A DNA stretch of 64,000 nt from Oculina patagonica. Its lineage: Eukaryota. A model generated the notes under the pieces. That model did not search any database and was not told the DNA's origin. It was given only the letters and a program-made list of their open reading frames with translations. Positions 28,601 through 49,381 of this stretch are shown here, one piece after another. The DNA lies in assembly GCF_052425735.1 (NCBI RefSeq), contig NC_135762.1, positions 27,652,001 through 27,716,000 of the forward strand, written 5' to 3'. A program made the position numbers and the translations under genes. Within the stretch, counting starts at the first letter, position 1. Each line of letters opens with the position of its first letter.

Positions 28601-30197
28601 GGGCTGAGATTTGGTGCGAAGTGACTGTGTGCGTTGTCCGTATTAGAGACTGAGAGGGTCCATATTATAGAGACTTCTTCTGAAGAAAATATGTGATAAT
28701 TTTGTTGGGACATCAGATATTTTCCGTAATAGAGAGGTGTCCTTACTTAGAGGTTTGACTGTATTGCGATTCTTGAGTAAAAGCTTACATTTCTGACTTA
28801 AATTTATTGTCTTTAGGGTTTTAGATACAAGATGAAGGCAGTATATGCTCATTTTCCCATTAACATCACCGTCTCAGAAGGCAACACCCTGGTAGAGATT
28901 CGTAATTTCTTGGGGGAGAAGTACATAAGACGCGTGAGAATGAGGCCAGGTGTCACCTGCACCAATTCCACTGTTAAGGATGAAATCATTCTGGAAGGCA
29001 ATGACATTGAGCTGGTTTCGAATTCAGGTTAGGTCATGACCAAATCCTTGTACTGTAGTTGCTTTCTTGTGTTGAATTATCATAAAATGCTGGTTATACC
29101 CCCCTCCCCCCCCCCCCCCTTCCACCACCATGGCTTAGTGCTCCAAATATTACCATTTGCTTTGGTTTTCATTACTACACTACACTTTGTGGCAAAGCCA
29201 CGAGTCATTCTCTCCTCATTTTTCCTCCTCATCTGCATACTTTTGACTTCTCAGGTCGCACATAGGATTTCAGGTACAAAAACCAACAACTTGCATTCAA
29301 TACACTTTGTGATTGGTTTCAAAATCTTGTGTCACTTTCTCGACCTATCAAAAGCAAAACTAAAATTTCCCACATGTTTTCTCACACGTTGTGCCACTAA
29401 ATTTGCTCACTGGGAGAAAAGACTTGAATGTTGGTGAATGAAAAAACTAGAAAAGAATTCTTGGCACTTCTGATCACATTTTTCTGTCAGGGTCAACAGT
29501 GACCCCTTCAGTTTTAATTGATTGGAACATGGTACAGGTTTAACGTTATGTCCACACTTTCACAGGGCAACCATCTTCAAAATCTTTGTTTGTCATCACT
29601 TTTTTTTTACCTTGGTTCACTGTTTTGATAAAGGGGCTTTGTCACGGATTTCAACAGATTTTTAAGCAGCCAAAATTTATATTTGTGTTGTAGGAAACCT
29701 GAAAATAATGGTCCATTTTTATTAACAATTGCTATATTAGAGCACTTAAACTGTTTACAAGCGTCCTTGGCTGCAGGAGGCTAGGATGGAAATGGATTGC
29801 AAGCTTGAAAAATTGAGGCTAAACTTTTCGAGTTGTTTCCGGGGGTCTTCAAAGTTTCAATATTTATAGCCGAAGTTTGATTTCTATCCACAAATTATAT
29901 ATTCCTTAAAATGTTCAGAGGTGATGTTTTTTATAGGTTAAAGTGCCTACCACTAATTTCAGAACAAAGACCAAATATCTGTGAAATCTTCTTGACATAG
30001 CTCCTTTTATGTCATTTTCTCAGACTTGGTAGTAATTTGTCAACAGTATGTGTGACAACTGTTCTCAACGCTCTTTTGCTCCTCATTTTACAGCTGCCCT
30101 GATTAAACAGTCAGCCACCGTAAAGAACAAAGACATCCGTATGTTCTTGGATGGTATTTACGTGTCTGATAAAACAACTGTTGTTGCTGAGGAATAA
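25691..30197 (+). CDS. RPL9: 60S ribosomal protein L9 (uL6), 188 aa
   Basis: Coding exons 25691-25736, 27135-27340, 28817-29027 and 30094-30197. Motifs: [56 protein letters not shown] at 30204. Confidence 0.97.
25834..26116. mobile_element. MITE (AGAGC..GTTTTCA family) in RPL9 intron 2
   Basis: TIRs present; homologous to 12361-12645. Confidence 0.8.
26120..26740 (-). mobile_element. L1/Tx1-type LINE 3' fragment (zf-RVT region)
   Basis: Translation [25 protein letters not shown]...[12 protein letters not shown]; A-rich tail on the minus strand. Confidence 0.75.
27480..27645 (+). mobile_element. L2-like 3' end with (ATT)n tail
   Basis: GCGCATTT...AAATGCGC stem-loop followed by ATT repeats. 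Confidence 0.5.
28030..28397. other. GC-rich, strongly self-complementary insertion in RPL9 intron 3 (TE terminus or structured RNA)
   Basis: Stems GGGTGCCTGG/CCAGGCACCC, CATGGCTGG/CCAGCCATG, AGGGGCT/AGCCCCT and CACTGATT/AATCAGTG. Confidence 0.5.
29632..30005. mobile_element. Degenerate Kolobok-like MITE in RPL9 intron 4
   Basis: AGGGGCTTTGTCA...TGACATAGCTCCT with TTAA-like flanks. Confidence 0.55.
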
Positions 30198-31166
30198 GCT
30201 TGTAATAAAATAATAAAACGTTATTGCCACTAAACAAGGTTGTGGTTTATTTTCCTTCCTTACAGCAAGAGTATTCTTCATTACAACATTGGTGCTCCCC
30301 AACTAACTGAACACCCTGAACAGGCTAACATGCACCTAGAACAATGATTATATATATCATTGTATTCTAAAACAAGAAGCTACTTAGTAGCTCGAAACCG
30401 GGTGGTTAATGTTTAACCACTCTTTTAGCTAACAAGAAAGCCTAAGGCTTTTAGACGTATACCCATTAGCGTTTTATTTCCTTTTGTTGCTGTTCAACAA
30501 GAAGTGCGTTATGTTGAAGCGTGACATGCGATATACGATACTCGGCCATTAGTATTAAAGGTCAAAGGCACTTTGATCGCTTTTGAAGACTTTGAAGGTA
30601 GAGATATCAGAGTTGCTTTCGTTCTACTTTTAAAACGCATAATATATAACTTGACTCTTTCAATTATATGTCGTACTGGTCATTTCTAACTGAGCAGCAA
30701 TTCTATTTTGCTCTGTGGTCTAAGCGATGATTTGTTGTTGAGTTAAACACACGGAAAACGCGTATAACGCACGTAATTTTAATCCCTCAAGTGGCAAGTA
30801 ATTTAAAACATTTCCTCCGTCCCATTCTCCTTCCTCCACTGAGGCAATTTCAAGTGGGTGATGAAAGATGACCTGTTTTAAGCCAATCAACATGCGTGAC
30901 CTTCAATGCCCTACCGACAAAAAAACTAAAAAAAAAAAAAAAACCGAAGGTAGATTATGAACCGGGGGGCACCAGACCCCCACCCGGTTAACAATTATTC
31001 CATGAAGGTGCGTTGGATATAAGATGGCGGATAGCCAACGAGGTACCGTAGCACAGAGTTGGCTATAACGATCTCGTATCCAACAAGTGCGAGTGGAATA
31101 CTTGTTAACCGGGCGGGGAGACTGGGCCGGCCCGGTTCATAAATCGCCCGGAATTTTTTCGTCGTC

Positions 31167-31198
<32 letters not shown>

Positions 31199-31221
31199 CT
31201 TGTCGGTAAATCGTTCCAGAC

Positions 31222-32757
31222 CCGCTCGGCCACTTTCTTGGCCAGGATTCAAATCACGCACCCTTGATGTTTACTCGGCAGAAGCTATTAAATCATTCTC
31301 CTATTTTAAATTTTATCTAATACCCTCAATTCTCTTAAGCGTGAAATATATATTTTTGTGTTATTCAAGCGTTTGAGTACTGGTTTGCGAAACCGGTGAT
31401 TTTTTTGACACGTCCAAGCAATTATTATTATTTTTTTTTTTGAAAACTGCTACGTCAGTCACGCAATGATTTTGCAGCAAGCTTCACGCATAACTGCTTT
31501 TAAAAAAAGGGCTGGTAGCCAGAGAATTTTTGAGCCGGATTACTTTGAAGATGCTCTTCATTTAATAGAAACAATTGTGTCCATTTTCATCCGTGTACAG
31601 TTGAGCCGGCAAAGTCGCGTATCAGAGACGATTGAATGTTTGCACAGCGAAATAATCTTATTTTTGTTCTTGATGTAAAAGCTTTACTTACACACTTCCC
31701 AAGACTTCAGTCGACAAAATGGTAATGTATAGTATTTCTACGAACTATGATGGTATTTGTGAAGGGATCCGCAAAGCCAGCAAGTAAAACAAATGGTCTG
31801 CAAAATGAAAATGAAATCTTGGCGCGGGTAATTTAATACATGTAATTAAATTCTACCACGGCATGCAAAATTTCACGTTTTTGAAATTTTCTAAATCTTT
31901 TTGCCTTTTAAAATGTTTCTTGACCCCATCTTGAATTAAAATTCATCTAAAACGTTTTCATGTTTCTTTTTTATTTTTTCACGTTTGTATTTAATAGTTG
32001 CCTTTTTAGGCTTTTGAAACGAACACGGCATCTATTTATAGATTGAGGCACCATGTTGATGTTTACATATTTGCGTTATTTGTCGTAGTAGTTCACTCGG
32101 CCGCTTTCTTGGCCAGGATTTAGATCCCGCACTTTTGATATTTACTCAGCAGGAGCAATTAAAATTTTATCTAATACCCCGATTTCTGTTAAACGTGAAA
32201 GATATATTTTTGTGTTTTTATTCAAGCGTTCGACTCAAGCGAGTTCTGGAGTCCGAAACCGGTGATTGTTTCGACAGGTCGCTGAGGTCGAAGCTTTTTT
32301 TACATCAGTCACGCAATGTTTTTGCAGCAAGCTCCTGCATTTAAAAACGGCTCCAGACTCTACTTTGAAGATGCTTTTCATTTAGCAAGAATTGTGTCCA
32401 TTTTGTCTATTTCCATCCGTGTACAGTTGGGCCGACAAAGTCGTGTGTCACAGACGAATTGAATGTTTACACAACAAAAGAACCTTATTTTGTTCTTGAT
32501 GTAAAAACTTTACTTGCACACTTTTCAAGAACTCATAAAACAAAATGGAAATGCAAAGTAATAATATAATAATTTCTTCAAACTAGAATGGAATGTAAAT
32601 CGGTAAAGCCATCGTGTGAAATAATAGACGGCAAAAATGAAAACTTGCCCTTCGGCGCGTATAATTAATTAAATTTTATCACGGCATCAGTATTTTCACG
32701 GCTTGGATTCAAAATTTTTAATGCAATTCAAATGTTTCTTCGCCTCATCTTGAATCT
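31222..32757. repeat. Diverged tandem duplication (~700-bp units at ~31222-31940 and ~32093-32757)
   Basis: Collinear shared blocks: CTTTCTTGGCCAGGATT, ACTTTGAAGATGCT, CATCCGTGTACAGTTG, CATCTTGAAT. Confidence 0.8.
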
Positions 32758-34073
32758 TTTTTTCACATTTAGTTGAGATTTTTAACAGCATCTGTTATCT
32801 AATACATGTGGTCTAATGCATGCCCTTTTTTAGTCTTTTTATTTTCTTTTGTAATTTCGTTTAGAAATTTTTCTGTTATTCTTGATATTTGACTCGTTTT
32901 ATTCGTTTTTTTATTATTTATGTTACTCGTTTTATTCGAGCAGGAGCCAATACTGTAATTTTCTGGTTACTCCGCTCTTTTTAGCGAGGAATATAAAATA
33001 TATATTTTTTGTTTTTCATTCAAGGGTTTTGAGTTTCAGTCGGAACCGAACGGCGATGGAGAAATGACCTGCAATGAATCACGCAATCAAGAACTTGCGT
33101 TTGCGTGACTGCTTCCCAAAATTGACGTAAAGAGCTTGCATGTTTGAAAGCTGAAAAGCTTTCTTATCTTGTTCTTATTCCCATTTTTTTGGTGTGGTAC
33201 ATTTTTAAAAATGTTTACATGTAAAAACACGTCTTAGTTTTTAACGAAATTGTTTGTTTGTTTCGGTCGGAGATCATTTGTACTGCCATTTAACTGGTTT
33301 GAGTTCATTTATTCAAGATTGCACACAAAACGTTTTCAATACCTACGTTATTCAGTATTCGGAAGAAAAATAAAAATTTGAAAGCCTAAGCAGGAATTTG
33401 TCCAAGCATGGACAAGCAATCCACAGACTTGCGTGTTACTCAATATAAATTAAATGGTATTTTAAAAGTTTTTGCTGTACTTGTCTAATAAAGTAGTTAA
33501 ACATCAACCGCCCGGTTTTAAGCATTAAGCTTTAGGCGTCTTGTTTAATTAAAAACGCCCAAAGAATTTCTATGTTCTACTATATTTGTGTCAATGGTAT
33601 ATGAGCTCATATACCATTGCCTGTTAACCAATCAAAACGCAGGAATTGCAATATACCATTGCTAGGTTTTAATATTTATTATTAAAATTTAACCATAGTA
33701 TATTGCAACTCCTGAGTTTTGATTGGATTACAGGCCATGGTTTATGAGCTCGTGTTTTTCGCAAGGTTTGAGATATTTCTTTGGGTGTTCGATGGAGTAG
33801 TTCATCTGGACAAGTCTCTCTTACATCAGGACAGACGATATCCCGCAAGATTGAGCTTGAAAAACTGTGGTTACGCTGCGCTTTGCACGATTTTTGACTT
33901 ATCCCGCAAAAACATACGTGTCTTGCAGCCCCCGTTTCCCCGCCCTGTTTTGTACGAATGACTTTCTGACCATACCATATATAGGTATCGAGCTAATTTC
34001 TTGAATTCTACTGAATAAATTTTAAACGAAAGTTAGTAGAAACTACAGTGAATAAAAAGAGCTGAGGTAGCTT

Positions 34074-34778
34074 AATGCGTGGAAAAATTGCCTGGAATCC
34101 ACAGGTGTGTCAATCTAGCCATCACGTGACGTCCTTCTTCACTGCGGCTTATTGACCTTATTCACGAGCGACGGCGAATCTGAAAGGCTGGTTTAAACTG
34201 TTAAAATACTTAGAACGATGCTGTCGATTGCAAAACGGTTTTCTAGGCGATTGGGCGTCATTGTAGTTTTATTATTGTTCGTTTGTGTCGGCAATTTTGT
34301 CAATTGCAGTTTCTATGATGAAAACCCGCCAACGGAATACACAGAGGCTAAATTGAATATAACGTACTGCGATGCCTCTGGCAAGAAATGTTTTGTAAAA
34401 CCTTACGCTGGCGATGGGAAGTTTGGCATCGATAGCCCTAAACACGGCTCAAGTGGATGGCTCTATACCTTGGTCGAAAACAACGTACATGGCTGTAAGG
34501 AATTCAACGTAGAGGTGGACAAAACCCCATGGATTGCCCTCATCGAAAGGGGAGTGTGTAACTTCAAGGAAAAGATACAAAATGCCTACAAACACAACGC
34601 TATTGCCGTGATAATTTACGACCACAAAGATAACAAAGATGAAATTATCATGTCGCACACTAACGCCGATAATATTGTAGCCGTGAGCATAACGAAATCT
34701 CTTGGAGAAGATCTAGCCCGCGCTCTTGTGAACAGAACCAAGGCTGTGTATGTAGAGATATCTGTTGGCGATAGCTAT
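34074..34778 (+). repeat. Partial segmental duplicate of 42812-43599 (promoter, 5'UTR and PA-domain part of RNF exon 1)
   Basis: Near-identical sequence from AATGCGTGGAAAAATTGC to GGCGATAGCTAT. Confidence 0.95.
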
Positions 34779-34880
34779 CCGGAACATCTTTCATCTACCA
34801 GTTCCAGGCCTTTCGCCAGTTTCAACCCGTATATGTGGCTGCTCGGCTTAGTTTTTGCCGCTCGGAGTAAATTCTGGTAA
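34218..34880 (+). CDS. PA-domain-only paralog of the RNF130/150-like ligase (signal peptide + PA domain + new 33-aa tail), 220 aa, single exon
   Basis: Intact ORF. About 17 aa differences over 187 aa versus the parent (hand count). No TM or RING. Tail: PEHLSSTSSRPFASFNPYMWLLGLVFAARSKFW. Confidence 0.7.
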   Translation: MLSIAKRFSRRLGVIVVLLLFVCVGNFVNCSFYDENPPTEYTEAKLNITYCDASGKKCFVKPYAGDGKFGIDSPKHGSSGWLYTLVENNVHGCKEFNVEVDKTPWIALIERGVCNFKEKIQNAYKHNAIAVIIYDHKDNKDEIIMSHTNADNIVAVSITKSLGEDLARALVNRTKAVYVEISVGDSYPEHLSSTSSRPFASFNPYMWLLGLVFAARSKFW

Positions 34881-37756
34881 ATGGAACACCCAAATCCCTT
34901 TATACGAATTTAGTTTGAGGATTTTGCTGACCATTGGCCCAAACCGGTTTCCCAATACAATCTTATCACTGTCTTATGAACGTATGTTATACCAATCTAA
35001 TTATAAGGCAGGAGGGCAGTAACTTGTTACAGCCTATTTTAATACTGAATAGATGCATAAATGAGTTAAATTCCGACGGCTCTGAAACGGCGACATGAAG
35101 GAACTAAAATGGCGACGAACAATGAGACTGCTGCTGTGAAATTACGACAGCGACAAACATAAAAGCAAACTGGCGTTATTTTTTTCTAAATAAGACATGT
35201 TTGCTTGGTATCGTGTTATGCTCAAGAAAAAGCGAGTGAAATTAGACAAATCGGTGGGTTTATGTACTAAGAAGGTTGATTAAGAAAATTTGCGACCAAA
35301 TAGCAAATCAGGTTTTCTCACCCTATTACATGTACAGAACAATATTGCTTTTTTATTTATGAATAATATGTCACGCTTCAGCGTTCCCTGAAAGCGAGTT
35401 TGAATCATTAATAGTATATAAATGATCCAGTGATTTTAAATCGCAAAAACTTAAAACAAACCCAAAATTCAGTACCTTGAAACTAATCATTCTATTTGCT
35501 TGTTTTCCGGACAGTGTACAGCTTTTAAAAGTATTGTCATACATCACAATCCTTTAAAGGAACCAGTCGTTCTAGAAAGACGAATCGCCCCGGGAGTTCT
35601 TCAGTCCATTGATCAAACCAATAGGAAGGTAAACTGGGTGCTGAACAAAGGGTTTCGCACTTATTCATCAGTCTGTGTATTCAAATTTGGATGATCTGTT
35701 CTCAGTACATTAGGGTATCTCATAGACTAAACGTAAACACTCAACTTTCCCTTGTCACTTTCGTTCTTAATATGTGAAACTCAACTGAATAAAACTACCA
35801 ACAAAAATCAGCCTGTGTGGTATCCTGTTGGAAACGATATCATGTTTGCTGTTGCTCAGCTGAAGTCAGCTTAAAGTCATATTTCGTCATCACGAAACGG
35901 GCGGGATAATGACAGAGAACCAACCTCCTGGTCCAAAAATGTTTCGGTCTCCGCAATCGCTTGAGGCTTCAGTGATGTTGAGTTTGTCGGGCCTGGAAAA
36001 AGTTCACTGCCGCAGAAAAAAAGGTTGGATTTCACATCCATTTAAAAGGATCTTAGCTATGTTAACCCATTTTTACTTAATGCACACTCGATTTTAGCCA
36101 GTTTCCGGCAGAAGTTTATTAATTATAACCAAGTATACACAGGCAATATTTTTGCTTGCAACCCAAGGGATTTCTGAGGTGGTTAAGTGGCATCACTGCC
36201 GCGTGGCTGATTTAGTTTCATCACCTCAAAGTCGCGGGTTCGAATCTTCCTGGACAGGGCTTATTCTAAATGGTTTGGGGGTTGAATAACCTCTCCCCCG
36301 TGGAGATTCGACCCTACGGCTCCAGCAGGCTTGGGGCCGAGCAATTCCTCCCTAGAAATTCCGATTTTTTTTCCCCTTGTTTTTCTGATTTTTTTTCTGT
36401 ATTACTGTTCTGAGCTTTTTACGGACACCATCACTTTTCAAACGCTAGTGAATCACGAATAGGGTTAATATCAAGATATTCTAGTATTGTTTTGTCCGAC
36501 ATTGCTCGAGTATTTGCCGTGCCTTCTACAGCCCTCGTCAAAATTTTTGGCACGATATCCAAATTCATTCCTTTTCTCCCCACTCCCCTTTTCAATGTTG
36601 ATTTCCCCAATTAATTCGACAACTTTGAAATGGAGGAGGGGATGGTAAAAATGAGCTGTGGTACCAAAATTAGTTGAAATTAGCAAAGTGTCTCAACAGT
36701 TTTTTCATGATTGTAGCTTCAAGCACCTTATTATCATCATTCAGTCATCTTCGGAAAACAGGCCGTTACTTGAAATTAGTTCATGTCAATACAAACGAGC
36801 ATAGCTTTAGACCATGAGCAGTCACCCGTTTCGACCTTTTTATTTCGACAGACAGCTTGACCGACAGTACGGCCAAAATTAGATGACTGAGTATGCAAAT
36901 CGAAGTTCATGGCTGGCATGTTTCATCTTTACGGATCGCGGCAATACTGTACATGTGCTTTAAGCTTCAGTCTCCGGCGCCATAGAATAACTCAGGCAGC
37001 TTAGGGAAAGGAAGGTGCTGCTTTTTGATATATCACAGTGCACGGTAAGTGCTTACCTTGTGAAAAGAGTTTCAGTGGAGCTTAGAATTGAAGTTCTAAT
37101 ATCTTGGAACACAATTAACCATACTGTAAATTAGTATCCCTTCCTAAACATACAGTCATCTTTATCTTTACAGTAAACACGTAAGGAACCAACGTTTGCT
37201 GCAGTATCCTTTTCCTCTCTGTATTTGGAGAAAGCGATCACGGTGTAAAATACATGACTCACATGCATAATGGAACAGTTTTCCCGGGCGAGTTTTATTA
37301 CGTTCAATCGCATTAAAGACGCCATATGCACAATGCAATTTTCAGTGTCGATTCAGAAGCCCAATATAGTTCTGATAGTTTTGTTGTTTTGTTCGTTCTT
37401 ATTGTTTGTTTTATGCTTTTCGTCAATTCTATAAACGGCTCTCTTTGTTAACTTGTTAACGTGTATGTCTTTCATTATCAAAAAACTGATTGCGCCTGAA
37501 CTCGGATGTCGGAAATCGAAACTGAAACATAACCCCGCAGTATGGCTCATTTCCCTCGTTCCCAGAGCCTTCTCTGCCTGGTAGTATTAGTGTTCTTTTA
37601 CTTTTATTTCAGAGCTCAATATTGGAAACTCGGCGTTTTGAAATTTTTTGATACGAGCTGTCGTGGAGTGCAAAACGCCATACGGACAGCGTACCTATAA
37701 TCAAGCCTGGGAAGACTCCAAATTCAACCCCGGGTCCCCGACTTTGTGTGGTAGAC

Positions 37757-38169
37757 CCGCGGGGGGTATTCCCTATAATGGCCTATACTGGGAGGCTCCG
37801 CCCGAAAGGGGTACCTTTTTTAGCCTTCAGGTATATAAAAGGGTCAGGGATTTCACAAGTTTAGGTTTACGAAAGGGTATGGAAATCTGTCATTCAGACT
37901 TTAGAAAGGGCCTGTAATTTAAATATTTCGCATAGTTGCAATTTATGGCTGTATTTTTTTTATTAAGCGCTATATGAAAATGACAGCACAAAACGTTTGT
38001 TCTAAGTCTATGCCAGGTCTTTTAGGTATATAAAAGGGGCACCTTTTTTCAGTAAAACTTGTACGAAAGGGGTTCAATTTCTGTCAAAATGGTATAAAAG
38101 GGTAAGGGGTTAGAGCTCGGAGCGGCGCCCCCCCTATATAAAACATTTTTGGGTCCCCCCCCCCCCCGG
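37757..38169. mobile_element. MITE with CCC(G)GGGGG...CCCCCGG termini; similar element at ~53542-53890
   Basis: G-run/C-run inverted ends with AAAGGGT subterminal motifs. Confidence 0.45.
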
Positions 38170-38366
38170 TGGTAGACAATGTTGATCAAAATAAAACAAC
38201 AACATAACAATTACTCAGGTTCACACAGGCGGGTTCTTATCGTGATCGAACGATTTGGGTTTTTGTTAGATCAGGCAATAAATATATAAAAGAACGTGTT
38301 TTCTTAATACCTTCTGTAGCTGATGGGGGTAACTTTTTTCTTTTCTTGATTTCTAGAACGATCAAC

Positions 38367-39401
38367 ATGGGAACTTGTATGGGAAGGCCGAGAACGGTAA
38401 ACCGTGAAATTGTACTAATCAGAGATCAAGGGACTAGAGATGCACTATGGGAAGAATATTATTTTGAGCAGTGGGGAATGTTAGCTAGCAGACACCGCCA
38501 ATGTGTGATGCAGGCTTTTTGGAAAGAAGCAAGCGTTACTAGAATTGAGGAACTGTTGAACGGGGACTCGGTATATCGTGAGATGATTAGCACGGGCAGC
38601 CAAGCGGTGGCTAGTGAGGTAATGATGGCTGCATTTAACCGCCTTGTTGCACGAGAAGTTGTGAAAACTACCATTGGACGCACTGTGCGTGTTGGAGGGG
38701 AGGGGTGGGAGATGTCTGCTTTTGCTGAAACAACGACACTTACAGCCGTCCATGGAACAAACGCCGCGCGCGCTCTAACAGGGGTCGTCCTCGGACCAGC
38801 GATTTCCTCCATTGTAGGGGAACAAGTAGCTCGAATTGCCGGAGAGAAACTTGGAGTGAGCGATCCGCAAGCAAAGACTCTTCTTTATGCCGGTGGATCC
38901 GTTGCAGGCGGGGCTCTTGTTGGCGCTTTTGTCGGAGGCCGTATCGGGGCCGTAGCAGGGGCTGCAGTTGGTGCCTTAAGCTGGGGGCTCCGAGAGCTTA
39001 TGAGTGGTGCTCTAGATCGAAGGAGGCCCACTAAGGTGGTTCCAAGGGACAACTGGTGCTACTGTGAAATTGGATCATTGAGCGATGATGTGGCTCAGTT
39101 ATGCTTTGGTACCTACAGCTCCAGTGATACGGTTTACCGCGAAACTTACCAACACGAATTCAGAGGACAAAATTCAAATTGGGTCATGAGCGCGGGCCAG
39201 CCACAAGACGGCAGCTTTCAACTGTGTATGTGGTTGGGGAACGCCATGATCAAGCTTCTGAAAAATGTTTATTATCGAGATCGAATTCGTGTCATTAGGA
39301 AACGAAGAACCTATCACATAGTTCACTGTAGAGGCCAGTTTCACCCCGGAAGAGACTCTGGTACAACGGTAGTTTACAAAATCAAAATACGGCGACATTA
39401 G
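38367..39401 (+). CDS. Uncharacterised glycine-zipper membrane protein with MGxC N-terminus, 344 aa, intronless CDS
   Basis: Long GC-richer ORF in AT-rich DNA. Strong Kozak (AACATGG) preceded by a polypyrimidine/TAG acceptor. Glycine-zipper segment AGGSVAGGALVGAFVGGRIGAVAGAAVGALSWG. Confidence 0.75.
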   Translation: MGTCMGRPRTVNREIVLIRDQGTRDALWEEYYFEQWGMLASRHRQCVMQAFWKEASVTRIEELLNGDSVYREMISTGSQAVASEVMMAAFNRLVAREVVKTTIGRTVRVGGEGWEMSAFAETTTLTAVHGTNAARALTGVVLGPAISSIVGEQVARIAGEKLGVSDPQAKTLLYAGGSVAGGALVGAFVGGRIGAVAGAAVGALSWGLRELMSGALDRRRPTKVVPRDNWCYCEIGSLSDDVAQLCFGTYSSSDTVYRETYQHEFRGQNSNWVMSAGQPQDGSFQLCMWLGNAMIKLLKNVYYRDRIRVIRKRRTYHIVHCRGQFHPGRDSGTTVVYKIKIRRH

Positions 39402-40964: not shown

Positions 40965-42870
40965 TTAACTGAGGTGCATACCTCTGTAAGGCTCGCATAT
41001 CTATCCTTTATAAAGATGAGTGCTTTTCTAAGGAAGATGCGCCTCTCTAACTCTCTAAGCTGGACCAAAATCAGACGAGATTGAGCAGGATAATTGTTTT
41101 ATAAATTAGCAAATTGTCCAAAAAAGTAATTTATAGCTACTTAAAATCTGTGATTATGCAGCGCTTTGCAAGATTTCGGATTAATCTTGCCAAAATATGA
41201 ATTTCGCAGGTCCGGTGGAGGAGGGGGGGGGGGGGGGGGGGGGGGGGGCGGTCGCGCGATATCTTTTATGTACGGATGGCTTTCTTACCATACCATATAT
41301 GGGGATCACGGTAATTCGTTGAACACTACTGAACAACTGAGTGATAACAACAGTAAATAAGAGAAGCTGAGTGGCAAATTCTTTTATCGCCAACTTGTGA
41401 ACCTTTTTCGTCATAATCATCACAAGTTTCGATAAATCAATAGTGCTCTCGAAAATATGTAAACGTAAATTTGTCATGGAAACTGAGGTTTCGCTTTTCA
41501 AGTTTTAATCATTTCCGGTGTTTCCCAAAGGAAAAGCAAACAATATACTGTTTGTTTCCCCTTTTGAATGACGTGTTGTAAGAATTATTACTGTAAATAG
41601 CTAGCTAAGTAAACTGAACACTTAAAATAAAAGTTATTTCTGACTTAACTGCTTCATTATAACCTTTTTTTAGTGCTGCGATTTAAGACGTTTAAGCGTT
41701 GGTATCGATCGAGTATCGAAAGTGACTGAAATAGGAACTTCGAATGAATTTCGACAAAAATGATCTACTTATAAAACACGCATAAGCTTGTTTCTGTTAT
41801 GATTTCTTGATGACTCTATATTGTCACTGGGCTGCTGATTTTGAGCGAAGTCAACAAGGTCTTGGCCATGTCTGATGTTTTTTTCTTCTACTTGCTGAAG
41901 AGAATTTTTCTCCGTTCGTTGCATGTCGGCGTTGTTATCGGTGAATTATGATGACTGGGAAAGTAGAGGTTTTCAACAGCTGGTTCAGAGTTTAGCATTG
42001 TTTCGCAAAAACGATCCACTGAGCGAACTAAATCTTGATCTAAATTTTGGGATCCGGGACAATCAACATGGATTTTGTAAATATAAACATATATATAGCT
42101 GAAATAAAAAATTACTCAATAAACAAATTATGGAAAGGAAAAATTACCAAGAAAAAAAAATGTTTATAGCACTAAGTTGCTCAGAAAAATCGTGCAGAAT
42201 TTTTTTGTGGATCCTTTATACTTGCGGCTTTTATAATTGGTCCAACCAAAATGCGGCAAAATCAAGAAATCGGACTTTCCGGTTGAATATTAGAGTACGG
42301 TTTTTCGATAGCCGCTGTTTAAATTAAATAACAGGTTTAATTGTGGCCATAGATGAATGATGAGCCTTGATCGCTTATTGCGAGTCAAATTTGAATTCGC
42401 GCACAGTAGCTGTTTTTTCGCGTCAGTTTTTTTTTTTTTTTTTCATTTCGGTATTAATTTTTGACTCAGCCTAGATTAAAGATTTCCGTAGACAGTACAC
42501 TTCATCATTTTGACGTCCACGAGTCGTCCGTTTGATTTTTTTTTTATCACAAATCAGCGAAGCACATAAACACTAAGCCAGCAAAGAGCATGTTTCAACG
42601 CACGTAAAAATTAATATGCATTTTTTTAAATTCAATATTCCAAAATAATTAGTGCTAAGTGACTTGCCGCGGGTATGTCGCAATTTTTTCCGCGCACAAC
42701 TAAAAATGCATGTTCCGGGATTGCTAAATTTCCAAGTCAGAGAACTTTTTTGGAATATAACTTCCGATCAAAATGAAGCCAATATATTTGGTTCGTGCCA
42801 TGACGTAGCAAAATGCGTGGAAAAATTGCGTGGAAATATCACAGCCAACCACAGGTGTGTCAATCTGTGA

Positions 42871-42949
42871 TCACGTGACTTCCTTCTTCACTGCGGCTTA
42901 TTCACGATCGGGCAAGATGGCGGAAGAACTGTTTCGCTGTTTATACTGA
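42871..42949 (+). promoter_or_regulatory. E-box/CLEAR-like TCACGTGAC, YY1-like CAAGATGGCGG and a 10-codon uORF upstream of the RNF gene
   Basis: TCACGTGAC at 42871-42879; ATGGCGGAAGAA...TACTGA at 42917-42949. Confidence 0.45.
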
Positions 42950-43038
42950 AAACCGTTCACAAGCGCTTGGAATCGACTTATCTTGTTATCGACGGCGAAT
43001 CTGAAAGGCTGCTTAAACTTTTGTGATACTTGAGAGCA

Positions 43039-45566
43039 ATGCTGTCGATTGCGAAACGGATTTTTGGGCGATTGAACATCATCGTAGTTTTATTATTGTT
43101 CGTTTGTGTCGGGAATTTTGTCAATTGCAGTTTCTACGATGAAAAACAATCCACTGAATATACAGAGGCTAAATTGAATATAACGTACTGCGATTCCTCT
43201 GGCAAGAAATGTTTTGTAAAACCTTATTCTGGCGATGGGAAGTTTGGTATGGATAGCCCTAAACACGGCTCAAGTGGCTGGCTGTATACCTTGGTCGAAA
43301 ACAACGTAAATGGCTGTAAGGAATTCAATGTAGAGGTGGATAAAACCCCATGGATTGCCCTCATCGAAAGAGGAGTGTGTAACTTCAAGGAAAAGATATC
43401 AAATGCCTACAAACACAACGCGACTGCCGTGATAATTTACGACCACAAAGATAACAAAGATGAAATTATCATGTCGCACACTAGCGCCGATGATATTGTA
43501 GCCGTGAGCATAACGAAAACTCTGGGAGAAGATCTAGCCCGCGCTCTTGTGAACAGAACCAAGGCTGTGTATGTAGAGATATCTGTTGGCGATAGCTATA
43601 CGAACAAATGGGTAAATCCGGCTTCTGTTCTGTTTGTTTCGGTTTCGTTCATAGTGCTAATGGTGATTTCGCTCGCCTGGCTGGTCTTCTATTACGTACA
43701 AAGGTTTCGGTATGTTCACGCACGGGATAAAACCGAGGTAAGAATCGGGCATTTAAAAACAGAAAACAGCATGTTTCTTTTAATAGTTTATGCTATATAA
43801 CAAAGCTAATGTATGTTCTCGAAGGTGGTGATGTTTTTATTTGTTTTGAAATTTACTGTTTCGCGCTCGCACGCAATTGGATTTCGAACCATTCACCGTG
43901 TAATGTATACTGAAATTGACATGTAACTTGCAAGTTTAATTTGCCTTAGTCATGTTTTGCTAACCGTTTTTGAGTGTCTTGTATTTTTCCTTTGTTGTAA
44001 TTAACGCGTTCGGAATTTTTAGTGGTCCGTCCGTCACTCTAATACTAATTACCTTGAGTTGAAATCAGACGGAAAAAACTCAAGTTGTTTTCATTGAAGC
44101 GCCTCGCAAATCGCAGTTTTTGTTGCAATTATTTATTTTTTGCATTTCAAGGCAAAACGAGGAATGATAAAAAGAGAGTTAGATTTTACTGCCTTCAAAA
44201 GTGCAAGGAAGACGCTAGTCAAGAGGATCTGTTGCAGACATCCGTTATCAACCCACTGTATTTTAATACTTTGTGTATGCATACAAATTTTGTCACTTTG
44301 TCGTACAATATTCTTATAAAATAAATAACAGGTATTTGCAGACTTTTGCAGTGTAAATAATGTATACAGTAAGATATCTTAAAAGACAGGTAAAATTAAT
44401 TTATTAATATTTCAAGAGGAACTGCATTTGTACATTGAGTAAATTTGTGTGTACTGGAATCCAGCTTTTAGCAATTTGGTCAATTTTGTACATTTCTGGA
44501 ATTTTTTATTTTAACAGAAACGTCTGACATCTGCTGCGAAGAAGGCTATAGCAAAACTCCCAACACGCACTGTCAGTAAAAAGGTATGTTTTAGTTGCCA
44601 AGAGATACAATATATGGTCAATTAGCTTATCTGTGGGAAAATCATGTTTGGGATATTGGCCATAACTAGTCCCTTTTGTCTTGGGTAGTTAAGGGCAATA
44701 AATATTGATAAAAATTGAGCATGAACTTGCATTCACTGGGTCTTGCATGAAGCTGGCATTATCATCAAAGCAGCTGTCTTTTGTAACTTCCCGTAATGTG
44801 GACAATGGCAACAACTTCTGTTTTTAGAATTTCATGAAGAGAAAATTGAAAATTATAGTAACAAGTACAGAGGTGATGTTTTTAAAAGTGTTCAGTTTAG
44901 GTGTGAAAATGGGTAAATTGTCAATGAAACACATTTTACTTCTAGAAAAACTGTCAGTGATTACGCAGCAATTTGCAAGAGTTCCAATGAATCTTGGTTA
45001 TCTAGGTAATTCTTGTACCAAAGTGGAGGTTGCTAGTGTTGGATATTTACCGGTACCAAGCTGCCGAGCGCCGAGGTGAATATCCACCACTAGCCACCTC
45101 CAGTTTGGTAAATAGTTGTTTTAGTATATAACAAAACAGTGAGATAATATATATAACCCAAAAAGGATTACTTTTAACTTGTTTATTCCTGGCAATGATT
45201 ACACTTTCCCCCCCAAGTTGCTCGGAGGTGAATAGCAAAGGGTATCCCATGTTTGAGTAACCAATCAGCACGCACCAACAATGGCATCTACTGTTTTAGT
45301 ATATACTTACACATGTTATGCTACTAGGTTTATAGGAACCAGTCACAATTAACGGATCATGAATTAATGCTTTCTGTCTATCTAATTGTTTAGACTGAAG
45401 ATGATGAAACAGACAGCTGTGCAGTTTGTTTAGATGGTTACAAAGCCGGAGATGTTGTCCGTATACTACCTTGCCAGTGAGTAAAACTCCTTATGTTTTT
45501 GCACATGTGCATACTCAGTGATACTGCACATGATAGTTAACTGCGCTGCGCAGTTTTTTCTCTCGC

Positions 45567-45602
<36 letters not shown>

Positions 45603-48600
45603 CCCCCCTCCCCGGGAGNNNNNNNNNNNNNNNNNNNNNNNNNNNNNNNNNNNNNNNNNNNNNNNNNNNNNNNNNNNNNNNNNNNNNNNNNNNNNNNNNN
45701 NNNNNNNNNNNNNNNNNNNNNNNNNNNNNNNNNNNNNNNNNNNNNNNNNNNNNNNNNNNNNNNNNNNNNNNNNAAGGAGTTTTCCATAATGTGAAAAATA
45801 GTCTAGGTCACTTTTATAACATGCTGAATCTGCTGGATGTGTTGCGAGAGCTGATAACTGTAAAATAATACAATTGTTTTAGTGTATTTTGTATTTATAT
45901 TGTTGTTACTTTTGGGTGATTTAGACCTTTAAACTTGATGAGGTACAGATTGGTTGGCAACTAAAGCAGCATACAGATTTTCTTGTTGCACACTTTATTT
46001 CCATCTTCAGGAGTGATAACTCTGAGGTTCAAGCCAAAATGGTTAATCTAATAACAAAATGACACTGAAAAAAGAATCAATGTAGTGCCCCAGGTTGTTT
46101 TTTGGTCAGTTAGAAATTTGTCATGGGTGTAGCTGCTAAAACTCTAAACACACCAAATCGGCCACAAAAGAAACCAAACAACACCCAAAATCAGCTGCAG
46201 AGGAAAAAAAAACAAATTCAGGTTCCAAGTGCGTGCCATTCTCTGTACTTTAATCACACTATCCTGAAGTCACTGCACGAGGGCACACAAATTGCTCGAT
46301 GAACTGGAAGTCACAACATGCACGGTTTCTAAAAGAAATACAGTCGAACCTCGATTATCCGGACTCGTTGGGACTAGGCTAAATAGTCCGGATAATCGAG
46401 GGTCCAGATAATCAAAAGTATGAATATTAATGAGCCAAGAAAAACGAGGGCATCTGACAGGCCGGATGTGGCGGTGCGGATCCATAAAGTTTGCTAACTT
46501 CCGTGCATCCTCTGCATCTTCGGAAATTTTTCCACATTTAACTGGAAAAAAAAGAAAAATTGCTCCATAATAGCAATAAATCAGCTGTTAACCATCCTCA
46601 CTAAACAAAAATTCCGAAAACATTGATCACTTTCAGGCAGTTTTTCTGTGAAAAAGGCGACGAAACCACGCCGATTCGTTCGCAAACAATTTGGAACATC
46701 CAGGCGTTTCTTGCGTCTTTTCGTGATGGGCCTGGTGACTAGACGTGGTGCCAACATGGACCGATCCAACTTTTTACGATGCTTTTCACTTCATAGAAGG
46801 ATTTAAACATTCTGAATTTTGCCATTTTGTAAACTTCAGTGTAATACAAGTAGGCAAAGACAGAAAGCAAATTTTTTTGTGTGAATGTTTTTATGGCTAG
46901 TGGAAACTGAATAAGGAAGTTGTCTGCCGAAGTATCAAATGTTTTTCAATTGGAAACTACACAATCAGAGTTTTCCAATGTTTTTTGACAGGTAAACCAC
47001 CTTGAGATAATGTTAAAATTGTTGTAGAACTTAGTTATATCTGGTCTTGAATGTGATTAATTAATATTCATGAAAAAATTGGGACCAGAGAAGGAAGTCG
47101 GATAATCGAGAAATCCGGATAATCGAGGTCCGGATAATCGAGGTTCGACTGTACAAAGATTGAAATAGACGCTGAACTATACTTGCCAAAAACACCAGTA
47201 TCAATGGGCTACAAATATGTACAGAAAATGCTTGAACCTCTTAAAACTGTGAACACGCTGAGAAGAAAATTTGCCTTTACAGCCCTAAACATGGCAGCCT
47301 TTTCATTACGTGTTTTCACACCACACTGCGCCAGCCTGGACACTAAACTCCTGCATGAAACAGCTGTATGTTACTAGAGCAAAACTTGAGCTTACAATGG
47401 ATAGCAACCAATCAGAGATTCTACATTGATCAGTAGTGCCATAGTAAACTTCATTATGATTGAAATTTTTATTCCCTTAACCAATATGCAGATAGACGGG
47501 AGTATCATGTAGCTCATGATGACATGTTCTTTTCCAGGCATGAGTTCCACAAGCTGTGCATTGACCCATGGTTGGTGGAGCATAGGACATGCCCCATGTG
47601 CAAGCTTAACATCTTAAAGGAACTGGGGGTGGTGAGTTCATAATTTCAGTTTTGCAGTCTTAAGGGTTTGAACCAAAGATTATTACTACCAAGACAGGGT
47701 TGTCATTAAGGGCCGGCTGCCAGCTAATTTCACCGCCCAAAAGAGAACTTAAATCCGATTGGATTTGATACTAGCCTAGAGAAAATTTAAGCATGACTGA
47801 ATGAAGTCATAAATTGAGGGCTCGTGCAAAATAGGGCGAAGTGATTTTGTTGCTTGGTTGATTTCCTGCCTGAAAAATACCCCCTTGGCTTTAGGCTAAT
47901 GAATGCGACTTTGTTGTACATGTACCTTGTTTTGTGTGAAGTTGATCTCTGCAATATTAATTTTAGAGAAAAAAGGTTTTTTTCACAAGTAATTGTCGTT
48001 CCAGTTGAAAATCACTTTAAAGCAATGTTACTACATTTACCTGTACATGGTTGGAGAAAATTTATAACATACCTGTTAAATGCCAGCATAGCACAACACT
48101 TGGCTGCTTGTCATCTTCTTGACTGTGCAGTTAAAGTTGCAACAGTAAAAAATTATGGCGTTTATTTCTTCCTCAGACCAGCGATGAGTGTCGCACTCAA
48201 GACGTGGAGGTTGGAACATCTGAGATTCCAGACGAAGACCATCACACTGCGGCTGATAACCCTGGTGTGGTTATGAATGAAATTGAACCTTCTGTGACAA
48301 ATGAAAGGAGACCAAGTAGTTCAGACACTTCAGGTATGCAGCCTTGGTTGGAAAAAATTAAAAATCGGCATCTGTCTGATTTAGTGGTGCTTTTTTAAGA
48401 GGTGGTGAACATTTTTGGTCCTTAGAAAATTGCTTTTGGCTGTTGTTGTGGCCACTGTGTTGTGTTCTTGGGCAAGGCACTTTACTCTGAGTCATAGTGC
48501 TTCTCTCCACCCAGGTGTATAAATGGGTACTAGCAAACCCTGGGATGGACTACAATCCATGCTACAATTCTTGGGACACTTACTGTTTTTCACACTTAAA

Positions 48601-49381
48601 ACAAAGAACAAATCAGCAATTACCCCCCTGCCCCATTACAATGTTGTGTAGCTTGAAAAAAATGCCTTCTGGTACCATCTATTTTGCAACATTGGTTTTG
48701 GGGGAAGGGAGTTCTCAATTTTTGAGAATTTGTAACAGAATGTCATGTTATACTTGTTGAAATGAGTCTTCCAAGGAATTATGGCACGGATTGTAGTACT
48801 TATCCCACCCTTGAGGGGGTACAGTTTATACTCTTAGTTACTCAATGGTAGAACAGAGGTTAGTATACCTTCACTTTTTGAGTGTCGAAAGTTAATTCCC
48901 GCGTTTGCTTTGGTTTTGCATTGCTACACATTAGTGATTGGCTTAAAAATCTCGTGCCACTTTCTCAGCCAATCACAACTAAAACCAAAACCAATCGTGA
49001 CTCGCTCGCGCACGTTTTCCCGCGCTTTGTGCCGGCTACATGTATTTGCTTCGAGTTTTGATTGGTTCACTGGATTGTCTGTGTCCAATTTGTGATTGGC
49101 CTTTAGGGGTAATTACTTTGGTTTTGGTTTTACGACACTCAAATGAAACCTGCTCTAGCATGGTATGAAAGGCCAGGTATAGGTTAGTACCTGCCTAATG
49201 GACCACAAGACTGAATGCAGCAGTGAAATAATGAAAGACTTTTTACTGTCTATTTTCAGAGAGCTCCAGTGTTTCTGGCTCTGGCCGCGTGCTTCATGTC
49301 AGCGCAGAAATGAACTGGGAAAGAGAAGGTCAATCCAGCTCAACATCAAACTTGGTTGAACATCCTAACCTGAGGGCTTAA
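43039..49381 (+). CDS. PA-TM-RING-H2 E3 ubiquitin ligase (RNF130/RNF149/RNF150/Goliath family), 406 aa
   Basis: Exons 43039-43737, 44518-44583, 45394-45476, 47538-47631, 48177-48333 and 49260-49381. Motifs: [56 protein letters not shown]...[26 protein letters not shown]. Confidence 0.95.
45619..45773. other. Assembly gap (N run)
   Basis: Run of n. Confidence 0.99.
46341..47151. mobile_element. Tc1/mariner(pogo)-type MITE
   Basis: TA|CAGTCGAACCTCGATTATCCGGAC...GTCCGGATAATCGAGGTTCGACTG|TA. Confidence 0.85.

What the first reader, a model, noticed from the sequence alone, without database searches (positions are those of the whole stretch)
34074..34880. Young PA-domain-only copy of a PA-TM-RING ligase, cut just before the TM helix and given a GPI-signal-like tail: candidate decoy ectodomain
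Seen: promoter, signal peptide and PA domain of the RNF130/150-like gene (42812-43599) are duplicated ~8.8 kb upstream. The ORF is intact, with ~17 aa and roughly 15 silent differences (hand count) and no frameshift or stop. Homology ends at GDSY, just before the TM helix. It is replaced by PEHLSSTSSRPFASFNPYMWLLGLVFAARSKFW* (small Ser cluster, spacer, hydrophobic run). Known: PA domains of this ligase class (RNF43/ZNRF3, GRAIL/RNF128) engage membrane substrates or ligands, and the RING ubiquitinates them. Inference: a secreted or GPI-anchored PA domain could compete with the parent ligase as a dominant-negative or decoy. The hydrophobic run is short (~11 aa) and followed by RSK, so secretion is as plausible as GPI anchoring.
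Basis: partly seen in the sequence, partly recalled or inferred. Interest (0 to 1): 0.8.

Follow-up and report, generated by a model that had tools for sequence, protein, structure and literature searches.

The report
Truncated ligase duplicate with transposon-derived tail
A coral (Oculina) genome carries a real, lineage-specific partial copy of an RNF130-like membrane ubiquitin ligase gene that keeps only the promoter, signal peptide and PA domain; its "GPI-like" tail is an accidental read-through into an old repeat element, and it may make a soluble PA-domain protein at low level.

Summary
The 220-codon ORF at 34218-34880 is a partial duplicate of exon 1 of the RNF130-like PA-TM-RING gene 8.8 kb downstream. 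The two are 93.6% identical over 187 codons, with 17 amino-acid changes and about 17 silent ones. Homology ends 9 codons before the TM helix.

New here:
- **Tail.** The 33-residue tail and its stop codon come from a 5'-truncated copy of an old dispersed repeat. It is too weakly hydrophobic for a TM helix and a poor GPI signal.
- **Age.** The copy sits in a TE-rich 6.7-kb block that is 1.1 kb and copy-free in a related coral. All coral orthologues found are parent-type.
- **Not an artefact.** The junction is seen in independent runs.
- **Expression.** Transcription looks weak and sample-dependent: about 7-18% of the parent's contig depth in one study, none in others. The runs are only guessed to be RNA.
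- **Selection.** The copy evolves about 3x faster than the parent. Even so, omega is 0.32 (differs from 1, p=0.01), and the coding part has no indels against at least 4 in the 155-nt leader.
- **Annotation.** NCBI already lists exactly this ORF as a protein.

Best reading: a low-expressed soluble PA-domain paralogue. A decoy role is plausible but untested.

The parts
33860..34018 (+). Distal upstream homology blocks of the duplicate. They match parent 41143-41336. In the parent, 1.4 kb separates them from the core promoter.
   Evidence: BLASTN blocks at 77-80% identity. The relative's contig L033 is contiguous across the 1.39 kb, so the copy carries a deletion, with a TGA(G/C)GTAGC microhomology at the join.
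34063..34217 (+). Duplicated core promoter and 5' leader. It includes the conserved CACGTGAC...CACTGCGGCTTATT block and carries copy-specific deletions of 12 and 72 nt plus two 1-nt indels.
   Evidence: Alignments A1 and A4 with the parent and L033. The copy-type contig X1 record 1 begins at 34089, and depth is about 0 just upstream.
34218..34880 (+). Intact 220-codon ORF: signal peptide, PA domain and a 33-residue foreign tail. The stop codon is at 34878-34880.
   Evidence: The exact protein is present in the NCBI set on the 33.96-Mb chromosome.
34218..34307 (+). Predicted signal peptide, about residues 1-25/30. It has a basic n-region, a 13-residue hydrophobic core and a small-residue c-region. 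This part is the most diverged.
   Evidence: By inspection plus a Kyte-Doolittle 11-residue maximum of 3.84 at residue 14. No SignalP was available. 14 copy-unique changes fall in the first 117 nt.
34467..34715 (+). PA (protease-associated) domain core, residues 84-166.
   Evidence: Pfam PF02225, 5.1e-14. The nearest solved ligase PA domain is RNF128/GRAIL 3ICU, 1.2e-7. The conserved N127-A-T glycosylation sequon is lost (N-A-I).
34779..34787 (+). Breakpoint: the last bases with parent homology (with a 1-nt insertion), then the switch to repeat sequence.
   Evidence: BLASTN homology ends at 34786 and repeat homology starts at 34788. Parent-type contigs leave the copy at 34778 with the parent's own continuation (table 7).
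34788..34944 (+). 5'-truncated copy (about 157 nt) of an old dispersed repeat of about 230-320 bp. It encodes tail residues 191-220 and supplies the TAA stop.
   Evidence: At least 10 other genomic copies at 74-80% identity. Other copies extend 30-110 nt further 5' among themselves. The TCTGGTAAATGGAAC stop context is conserved in the repeat family.
34881..35793 (+). Probable unspliced 3' UTR, up to the AATAAA at 35788-35793 (tentative).
   Evidence: X4 record 20 runs 34749-35642 at depth 14.6. X4 record 21 and X1 record 4 end at 35785 and 35776. AATAAA read.
42801..49378 (+). Parent gene, an RNF130-like PA-TM-RING ligase. Exon 1 CDS is 43039-43737. Further exon matches lie within 44515-44583, 45394-45477, 47536-47637, 48168-48332 and 49286-49378; these are tblastn spans, a few codons wider than the exons at some boundaries.
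   Evidence: tblastn with P0020. The 406-aa RefSeq protein is P0030. Parent-type contigs are deep, 72-165.

Best explanation
**Shown.** A segment of about 2.5 kb of the RNF130-like PA-TM-RING gene was copied by a non-homologous event into a transposon-rich spot 8.8 kb upstream. The segment held the upstream region, core promoter, leader and the first 187 codons of exon 1. The break lies inside exon 1, 9 codons before the TM helix, and abuts a truncated old repeat. The frame runs on for 33 codons to a stop that belongs to the repeat. The copy later lost 1.39 kb, 72 nt and 12 nt upstream but has no indel in the coding part. It is specific to the Oculina lineage.

**Inferred.** The locus is an independent, unspliced, weakly and variably transcribed gene of about 1.7 kb. 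Its product is a signal-peptide-bearing PA domain without membrane anchor or RING: a soluble luminal or secreted PA protein with an unstructured, mildly hydrophobic C-terminus. It cannot ubiquitinate anything. If it acts, it acts by binding what the parent's PA domain binds, either partners or the parent's own ectodomain. It would then work as a competitor or modulator. Purifying selection on the PA part suggests that the protein matters.
For: - **Duplicate and breakpoint:**
- **Tail is a repeat:**
- **Lineage-specific:** window 30277-37016 corresponds to only 1.1 kb in the related coral L029, with no copy within 10 kb either side of its orthologue. All 24 database homologues are parent-type with a TM helix, and none has the tail.
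- **Deletions are in the copy:**
- **Junction seen independently:**
- **Transcript-like coverage:** contigs run from 34089 to about 35785. Depth is about 0 immediately upstream and in silent stretches. The contig runs straight through the candidate splice donor at 34876, and no joints were seen.
- **Exact ORF in the NCBI protein set:**
- **Selection:** NG86 dN/dS is 0.28. In a GY94 branch model written for this analysis, omega of the copy branch is 0.32. omega=1 is rejected (2dlnL=6.6, p=0.010), and the value does not differ from the background of 0.23 (p=0.47).
- **Indels:** none in 569 nt of coding homology, against at least 4 copy-specific indels in the 155-nt leader.
- **Retained features:** six cysteines and two of the three post-signal-peptide N-glycosylation sequons are kept, and the tail is not TM-like.
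Against: - **Weak expression evidence.** The runs are only guessed to be RNA and are contigs, not reads. Copy-type depth is 5.8-14.6, against a background of 0-6 and a parent depth of 72-165.
- **Absent from several runs.** Three runs of the same or a sister label hold none of the tail and 3' flank words (X8, X11, X12). Large DNA runs of organism A hold only 10%. The locus may therefore be polymorphic or diverged.
- **Fast evolution.** The copy branch is about 3x longer than the parent's.
- **Lost sequon.** It has lost an N-glycosylation sequon conserved as N-A-[T/S] from Nematostella to all corals compared.
- **Uneven divergence.** The leader and signal peptide are about 9-12% copy-unique, and the PA part 3.8%. 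Gene conversion by the parent could partly explain this, and could also explain the absence of indels.
- **Small counts.** The selection test rests on about 30 substitutions.
- **No binding partner is known.**
Confidence: 0.5

Rival explanations
1. It is a non-functional relic. The partial duplicate retains a leaky promoter. Its ORF is open by chance, helped by occasional gene conversion from the parent, and any product is irrelevant or degraded.
For: - Partial duplicates cut inside an exon are usually dead on arrival.
- The tail is accidental repeat sequence.
- Expression is low or absent in most runs.
- The rate is 3x accelerated.
- A deeply conserved N-glycosylation sequon is lost.
- The mosaic divergence is compatible with conversion of the PA part.
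- The locus is embedded among TEs, including one family with 99%-identical copies.
Against: - omega=1 is rejected on the copy branch (p=0.010), and conversion from the parent does not lower omega of copy-specific changes.
- There are no indels or stops in 663 nt, while the adjacent 155-nt leader has at least 4 copy-specific indels.
- All cysteines are kept.
- The divergence is as old as a species split (dS 0.16 vs 0.14).
Confidence: 0.33
2. One reading: the tail is a GPI-attachment signal, so the PA domain is displayed on the cell surface as a lipid-anchored decoy.
For: The tail has the general layout: a small-residue cluster (SSTSS), a 9-residue spacer and a hydrophobic run. Some real GPI signals tolerate polar residues after the hydrophobic part (own knowledge).
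Against: - The hydrophobic run is only 11 residues and is followed by RSKFW.
- The Kyte-Doolittle 19-residue maximum is 0.92.
- The sequence is a chance translation of a repeat element, with no homologue carrying it.
- No GPI predictor was available, so this is not formally excluded.
Confidence: 0.07
3. The copy is the first exon of a fusion gene. It would be spliced from the TG|GTAAAT site at 34876 to the downstream intronless MGxC/glycine-zipper ORF (38346-39401), as in GenBank model KAL9973544.1 (ACROYT_G020014, 569 aa).
For: The model exists and joins ...ARSKF to ...RTINMGTCMG. A good donor-like GTAAAT overlaps the stop codon.
Against: - No donor/acceptor pair in the window reproduces the model's junction peptide with a single intron.
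- No such joint appears in four runs, and a 1.7-kb contig reads straight through the donor.
- The same NCBI set also holds the two parts as separate proteins of 220 and 344 aa.
- In the related coral the MGxC gene stands alone with no PA exon upstream.
Confidence: 0.05
4. It is an assembly artefact: a mis-joined or collapsed duplicate.
For: None found.
Against: The junction and 0.86 kb beyond it occur in a contig from a different sample at about 98.8% identity. They also occur in DNA runs from two studies.
Confidence: 0.01

Closest known systems
PA-TM-RING E3 ubiquitin ligases of the Goliath branch (RNF130, RNF150, RNF128/GRAIL); the parent is annotated 'RNF130-like'
   Same: Direct descent: the same signal peptide, PA domain and cysteines, at 91% amino-acid identity to the parent over 187 residues. 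The nearest solved ligase PA domain is RNF128, 3ICU.
   Different: It lacks the TM helix and the RING-H2 finger. It therefore cannot be membrane-anchored in the family's way and cannot act as an E3.
PRADC1/PAP21, a vertebrate secreted PA-domain-only protein (Rodriguez et al. 2019, FASEB J 33:14748, cited in PMC10598410; domain make-up from own knowledge)
   Same: The same predicted architecture: signal peptide plus a single PA domain, soluble in the secretory pathway.
   Different: PRADC1 is an old, conserved gene family. This ORF is a recent lineage-specific derivative of a ligase gene with a repeat-derived tail. Homology to PRADC1 was not tested.
Truncated soluble paralogues or isoforms of membrane receptors that act as decoys, and new genes formed by partial duplication plus TE exonisation (general concepts, own knowledge)
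   Same: Loss of the anchor and effector domains with retention of the ligand-binding ectodomain. The C-terminus and stop come from a transposable-element fragment.
   Different: No binding or competition has been shown here. PA-domain variants of RNF167 that behave as dominant negatives are full-length mutants, not natural truncated genes (PMC8834447).

Membership tests
PA-TM-RING E3 ligase family (definition in PMC8834447: signal peptide, PA domain, single TM, RING-H2) | N-terminal signal peptide | tested here: inconclusive
   A basic n-region and a 13-residue hydrophobic core are retained (Kyte-Doolittle 11-residue maximum 3.84). No dedicated predictor was run.
PA-TM-RING E3 ligase family | PA domain | tested here: met
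   Pfam PF02225, E=5.1e-14, residues 84-166.
PA-TM-RING E3 ligase family | Single transmembrane helix after the PA domain | tested here: not met
   Homology ends 9 codons before the parent's TM helix. The tail's Kyte-Doolittle 19-residue maximum is 0.92, against 2.69 in the parent.
PA-TM-RING E3 ligase family | Cytoplasmic RING-H2 finger | tested here: not met
   The ORF stops at residue 220. No RING is found between the copy and the parent's own exons 3 and 4. There is no splice to the parent's exons. The two donor-like sites inspected by eye, at 34876 and about 34867, would give phase 2 or 1 against the parent exon 2's phase 0; the phases were reckoned by hand, not by a tool.
GPI-anchored proteins | C-terminal signal: small omega-site residues, polar spacer, then an uninterrupted hydrophobic stretch of about 15-20 residues to the C-terminus | tested here: inconclusive
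   A small-residue cluster and a spacer are present. The hydrophobic run is only 11 residues and is followed by RSKFW. NetGPI and PredGPI are not available with these tools.
Processed retrocopy | Intron loss, a poly(A) tract, no promoter | tested here: not met
   The copy carries upstream non-transcribed homology. The 1.39-kb gap has no GT-AG ends but does have microhomology. The copy ends inside exon 1 with no poly(A).

The most novel reading that the evidence does not exclude
A natural, lineage-specific soluble PA-domain antagonist. The truncated paralogue would be secreted or kept in the endosomal lumen. There it would bind the partners, or the ectodomain, of its own parent RNF130-like ligase and tune that ligase's substrate ubiquitination in Oculina. 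It would be a new regulator born from a partial duplication, with a transposon fragment supplying the C-terminus.
Probability: 0.2. Interest if true: 0.6.

Novelty: new member of a known kind. Interest (0 to 1): 0.35.

Why it matters
If the ORF is functional, it is a clean, datable example of gene birth by partial duplication plus capture of a stop codon and C-terminus from a repeat element. It would also be a natural experiment on what a PA domain of the Goliath/RNF130 ligase branch does when freed from its membrane anchor and RING. The ligands of these PA domains are largely unknown (PMC8834447), so a naturally soluble version could serve as bait. If it is not functional, it is an ordinary decaying partial duplicate, and the 'GPI tail' is a reminder that TE read-through can mimic sorting signals.

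Tried and rejected
- **AlphaFold2 model.** The model of the copy, built on a 10-sequence alignment, was poor (mean pLDDT 49.9). No fold search was done. Only the secondary-structure order is compatible with a PA fold.
- **RING search.** A regex for a single-exon RING in the window found nothing, because the parent's RING is split by an intron.
- **Rfam and ORFs of the neighbouring repeat.** An Rfam scan of the copy's surroundings and of the tandem-array units similar to 35644-36611 gave no hit. ORFs there gave nothing recognisable.
- **Retrocopy origin.** Rejected: upstream homology is present, and the internal gap has no intron-like ends.
- **Simple tandem duplication.** Rejected: the 6.2 kb between copy and parent is not repeated after the parent.
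- **TE-mediated multi-copy capture.** Not supported: only two loci exist in the genome.
- **GenBank fusion model.** An exhaustive donor/acceptor scan gave no pair that reproduces its junction.
- **Duplication older than the split from the L033 species.** Considered because of the long copy branch and the mosaic divergence. Informative sites favour (copy, parent) 8:3:1, and the ML tree gives 88% support. The data are too few to exclude it.
- **Copy-type letters in the PA body.** None could be seen in contigs. Logan contigs drop the rarer of two near-identical variants, so this says nothing about absence.

Full report
**What is there**

The window is G000:C5:27652001-27716000 of a 529-Mb scleractinian coral genome. 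The downstream gene's exons translate identically to NCBI proteins of Oculina patagonica: KAL9973545.1, and XP_078370618.1 'E3 ubiquitin-protein ligase RNF130-like', 406 aa.

The reported ORF is real. It spans 34218-34880 (+) and encodes 220 aa with no stop or frameshift. It carries a Pfam PA domain (PF02225, 5e-14, residues 84-166). Its nearest solved ligase relative is the RNF128/GRAIL PA domain 3ICU.

The ORF aligns without gaps to codons 1-187 of parent exon 1 (43039-43737). The parent is complete. It has a TM helix 9 residues after GDSY, and its RING-H2 is split between exons at about 45394-45477 and 47536-47637. Only these two loci exist in the genome.

**Extent and mechanism of the duplication**

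Homology covers four blocks:

| Copy | Parent | Identity |
|---|---|---|
| 33860-33915 | 41143-41198 | 77% |
| 33945-34018 | 41263-41336 | 80% |
| 34063-34156 | 42801-42905 | 79% |
| 34169-34786 | 42990-43606 | 92.4% |

A 3.8-kb contig of a related coral (L033) is colinear with the parent across the 1.39 kb, 72 nt and 12 nt that the copy lacks. These are therefore deletions in the copy, or were made when it formed. The 1.39-kb gap has a short microhomology at its join and no intron-like ends, so the copy is not a retrocopy.

The 6.2 kb between copy and parent is not repeated after the parent, so this was not a simple tandem duplication. Instead a fragment of about 2.5 kb was pasted into a TE-rich spot. 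Immediately upstream lie a TE with 97-99%-identical copies genome-wide (to 33546) and a small palindromic element (33590-33751).

In a related coral genome (L029, ENA ERZ25067872) the flanks are syntenic. There, window 30277-37016 (6.7 kb) corresponds to only 1.1 kb, and no copy lies within 10 kb either side of its orthologue.

**The tail**

Window 34788-34880 matches at least ten other places in the genome at 76-80% identity. The similarity extends to 34944. Among themselves the other copies extend a further 30-110 nt on the 5' side, making an element of about 230-320 bp. The copy therefore abuts a 5'-truncated, old member of a dispersed repeat family.

The stop codon lies in a motif (TCTGGTAAATGGAAC) that is conserved in the family. 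The tail is thus a chance translation of repeat DNA. Its hydrophobic run is 11 residues and is followed by RSKFW. Its best 19-residue Kyte-Doolittle mean is 0.92, against 2.69 for the parent's TM helix.

None of the 24 homologues found among 5.8 billion proteins carries the tail. All coral orthologues, and the Nematostella orthologue, continue into the conserved TM helix. A GPI predictor was not available. On composition alone the tail is a poor GPI signal and not a TM helix.

**Is it an artefact, and is it expressed?**

Four runs (Logan contigs, guessed to be RNA) were laid on 33500-39400 at 90% likeness or more.

- Deep contigs (depth 72-165) carry the parent's letters. They leave the copy at 34778 and continue with the parent's own sequence, so they are parent transcripts.
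- Copy-type contigs exist at lower depth. X1 record 1 covers 34089-34364 at depth 5.8. It has the copy's structure without the 72-nt segment, and shows none of the parent's letters at the diagnostic sites listed for 34200-34316 in table 3.
- X4 record 20 covers 34749-35642 at depth 14.6. It starts exactly where 31-mers become copy-specific and crosses the junction, the stop codon and the GTAAAT donor-like site unspliced, at about 98.8% identity.
- Depth is about 0 just upstream (33894-34090) and in silent stretches (37243-37636, 38228-38621). That pattern argues for RNA rather than genomic DNA. Even so, scattered background of depth 2-6 exists elsewhere.
- Contigs end at 35776 and 35785, next to an AATAAA at 35788-35793.

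A second index search with the copy-only stretch 34749-35640 gave the following:

| Runs | Label | Share of words held |
|---|---|---|
| One DNA run (probably the assembly's source) | organism C | 0.97 |
| Independent 2017 DNA study | organism C | 0.21-0.63 |
| Four 'RNA?' runs of study P1 | organism A | 0.35-0.70 |
| X8, X11, X12 | organisms A and C | 0.00 |
| Large DNA runs | organism A | 0.10 |

So the junction is real. Transcription is probable, but low (about 7-18% of the parent's contig depth) and sample-dependent. The locus may be polymorphic or diverged in some individuals.

NCBI's protein set contains exactly this 220-aa sequence on the chromosome. It also holds a 569-aa GenBank model (ACROYT_G020014) that fuses it to the downstream MGxC ORF. 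I found no read joint for that fusion. No single intron reproduces its junction peptide.

**Selection**

- Pairwise NG86 for copy against parent gives dS 0.159, dN 0.044 and omega 0.28. Parent against L033 gives dS 0.140.
- With six sequences the ML tree groups copy and parent (88% UFboot). The copy branch is 0.051 and the parent branch 0.016. Parsimony-informative sites favour this grouping 8:3:1.
- Polarised by two outgroups, the copy gained 11 non-synonymous and 9 synonymous changes. The parent gained 3 and 3.
- A GY94 (F3x4) branch model that I wrote and optimised gives omega(copy)=0.32. Fixing it at 1 costs 3.3 lnL units (p=0.010). It is not different from the background of 0.23 (p=0.47).
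- The coding homology (569 nt) has no indel. The 155-nt leader has at least four copy-specific indels (12 nt, 72 nt and two of 1 nt).
- All six cysteines are kept.

Against constraint:

- The copy evolves about 3x faster than the parent.
- It lost the N127-A-T sequon, which is conserved (as N-A-T, or N-A-S in one species) in every orthologue compared.
- Copy-unique changes are unevenly spread: 21 per 230 nt upstream, 14 per 117 nt in the signal-peptide part, and 17 per 452 nt in the PA part. This fits selection on the PA domain, but also partial gene conversion by the parent.
- All counts are small.

**Interpretation**

These points are shown:
- It is a lineage-specific partial duplicate cut inside exon 1.
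- It has a repeat-derived C-terminus and stop.
- It is present in independent samples.
- It is already listed as a protein in NCBI.

These points are inferred:
- It is a separate, weakly transcribed, unspliced gene.
- Its product is a soluble signal-peptide-plus-PA protein.
- It lacks both features that make the family an E3 ligase (TM and RING; PMC8834447). It is therefore a descendant of that family but not a functional member.

PA domains of this family mediate protein-protein contacts and localisation, and PA-domain mutants of RNF167 can act as dominant negatives (PMC8834447). A competitor or modulator role is therefore the most natural mechanism, but nothing here tests it. A secreted PA-only architecture is itself known: vertebrate PRADC1 (reference seen, details from own knowledge).

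My probabilities:
- About 0.5 that the protein is made and matters. This includes the decoy reading (about 0.2).
- Separately, about 0.07 for the GPI-anchored version.
- About 0.33 that it is a decaying relic.
- About 0.05 that it is the first exon of a fusion gene.
- About 0.01 that it is an artefact.

**Novelty**

This is a new member of known kinds: a partial-duplicate new gene, TE-supplied C-terminus, PA-only secretory protein. It is not a new kind of system.

Noticed in passing
window 38346-39401 (+): An intronless ORF of 344-351 aa (MGTCMG... start, glycine-zipper middle) with no Pfam hit. It is conserved at 85% nucleotide identity and open (339 aa) at the syntenic place in the related coral L029. 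It is also present in a 1.7-kb Logan contig (P0029). A GenBank model fuses it to the PA copy. The scan has already noted it (s1-294266).
   Followed up: partly
window 32800-33546 (element continues upstream): A transposable element with at least 40 copies at 94-99% identity across the genome, most at 97-99%. The family appears to be very recently active. It ends about 310 bp upstream of the duplicated segment.
   Followed up: no
window 35644-36611: This stretch is 70-79% similar (short sub-stretches up to about 90%) to units of long tandem arrays on contigs C3 (period about 3.4 kb), C6 (about 4.6 kb), C7 (about 4 kb) and C13 (about 3.3 kb). It gave no Rfam hit, and the ORFs listed there gave nothing recognisable by eye (no Pfam scan was run on them). 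Its nature is unknown.
   Followed up: partly
window 61754-64000 (- strand): A long array with a 9-nt period. On the minus strand it translates into GEP/REP-type tripeptide repeats (collagen-like low complexity), interrupted by a stop-rich spacer. It is probably repetitive exons of a gene that runs off the window.
   Followed up: no
window 33590-33751; also 60273-60357: A small palindromic (MITE-like) element between the young TE and the duplicate. It is extremely abundant in all four runs (depth 1400-3500).
   Followed up: no
window 27058-29097: Exons syntenic with exons in the related coral L029 whose products hit Pfam Ribosomal_L6. Together with the MGxC ORF, this anchored the synteny comparison.
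   Followed up: no
window 37637-38227: A highly abundant repeat (depth 500-7000 in all runs) just upstream of the MGxC ORF, with poly-C/poly-G tracts at 38130-38168.
   Followed up: no
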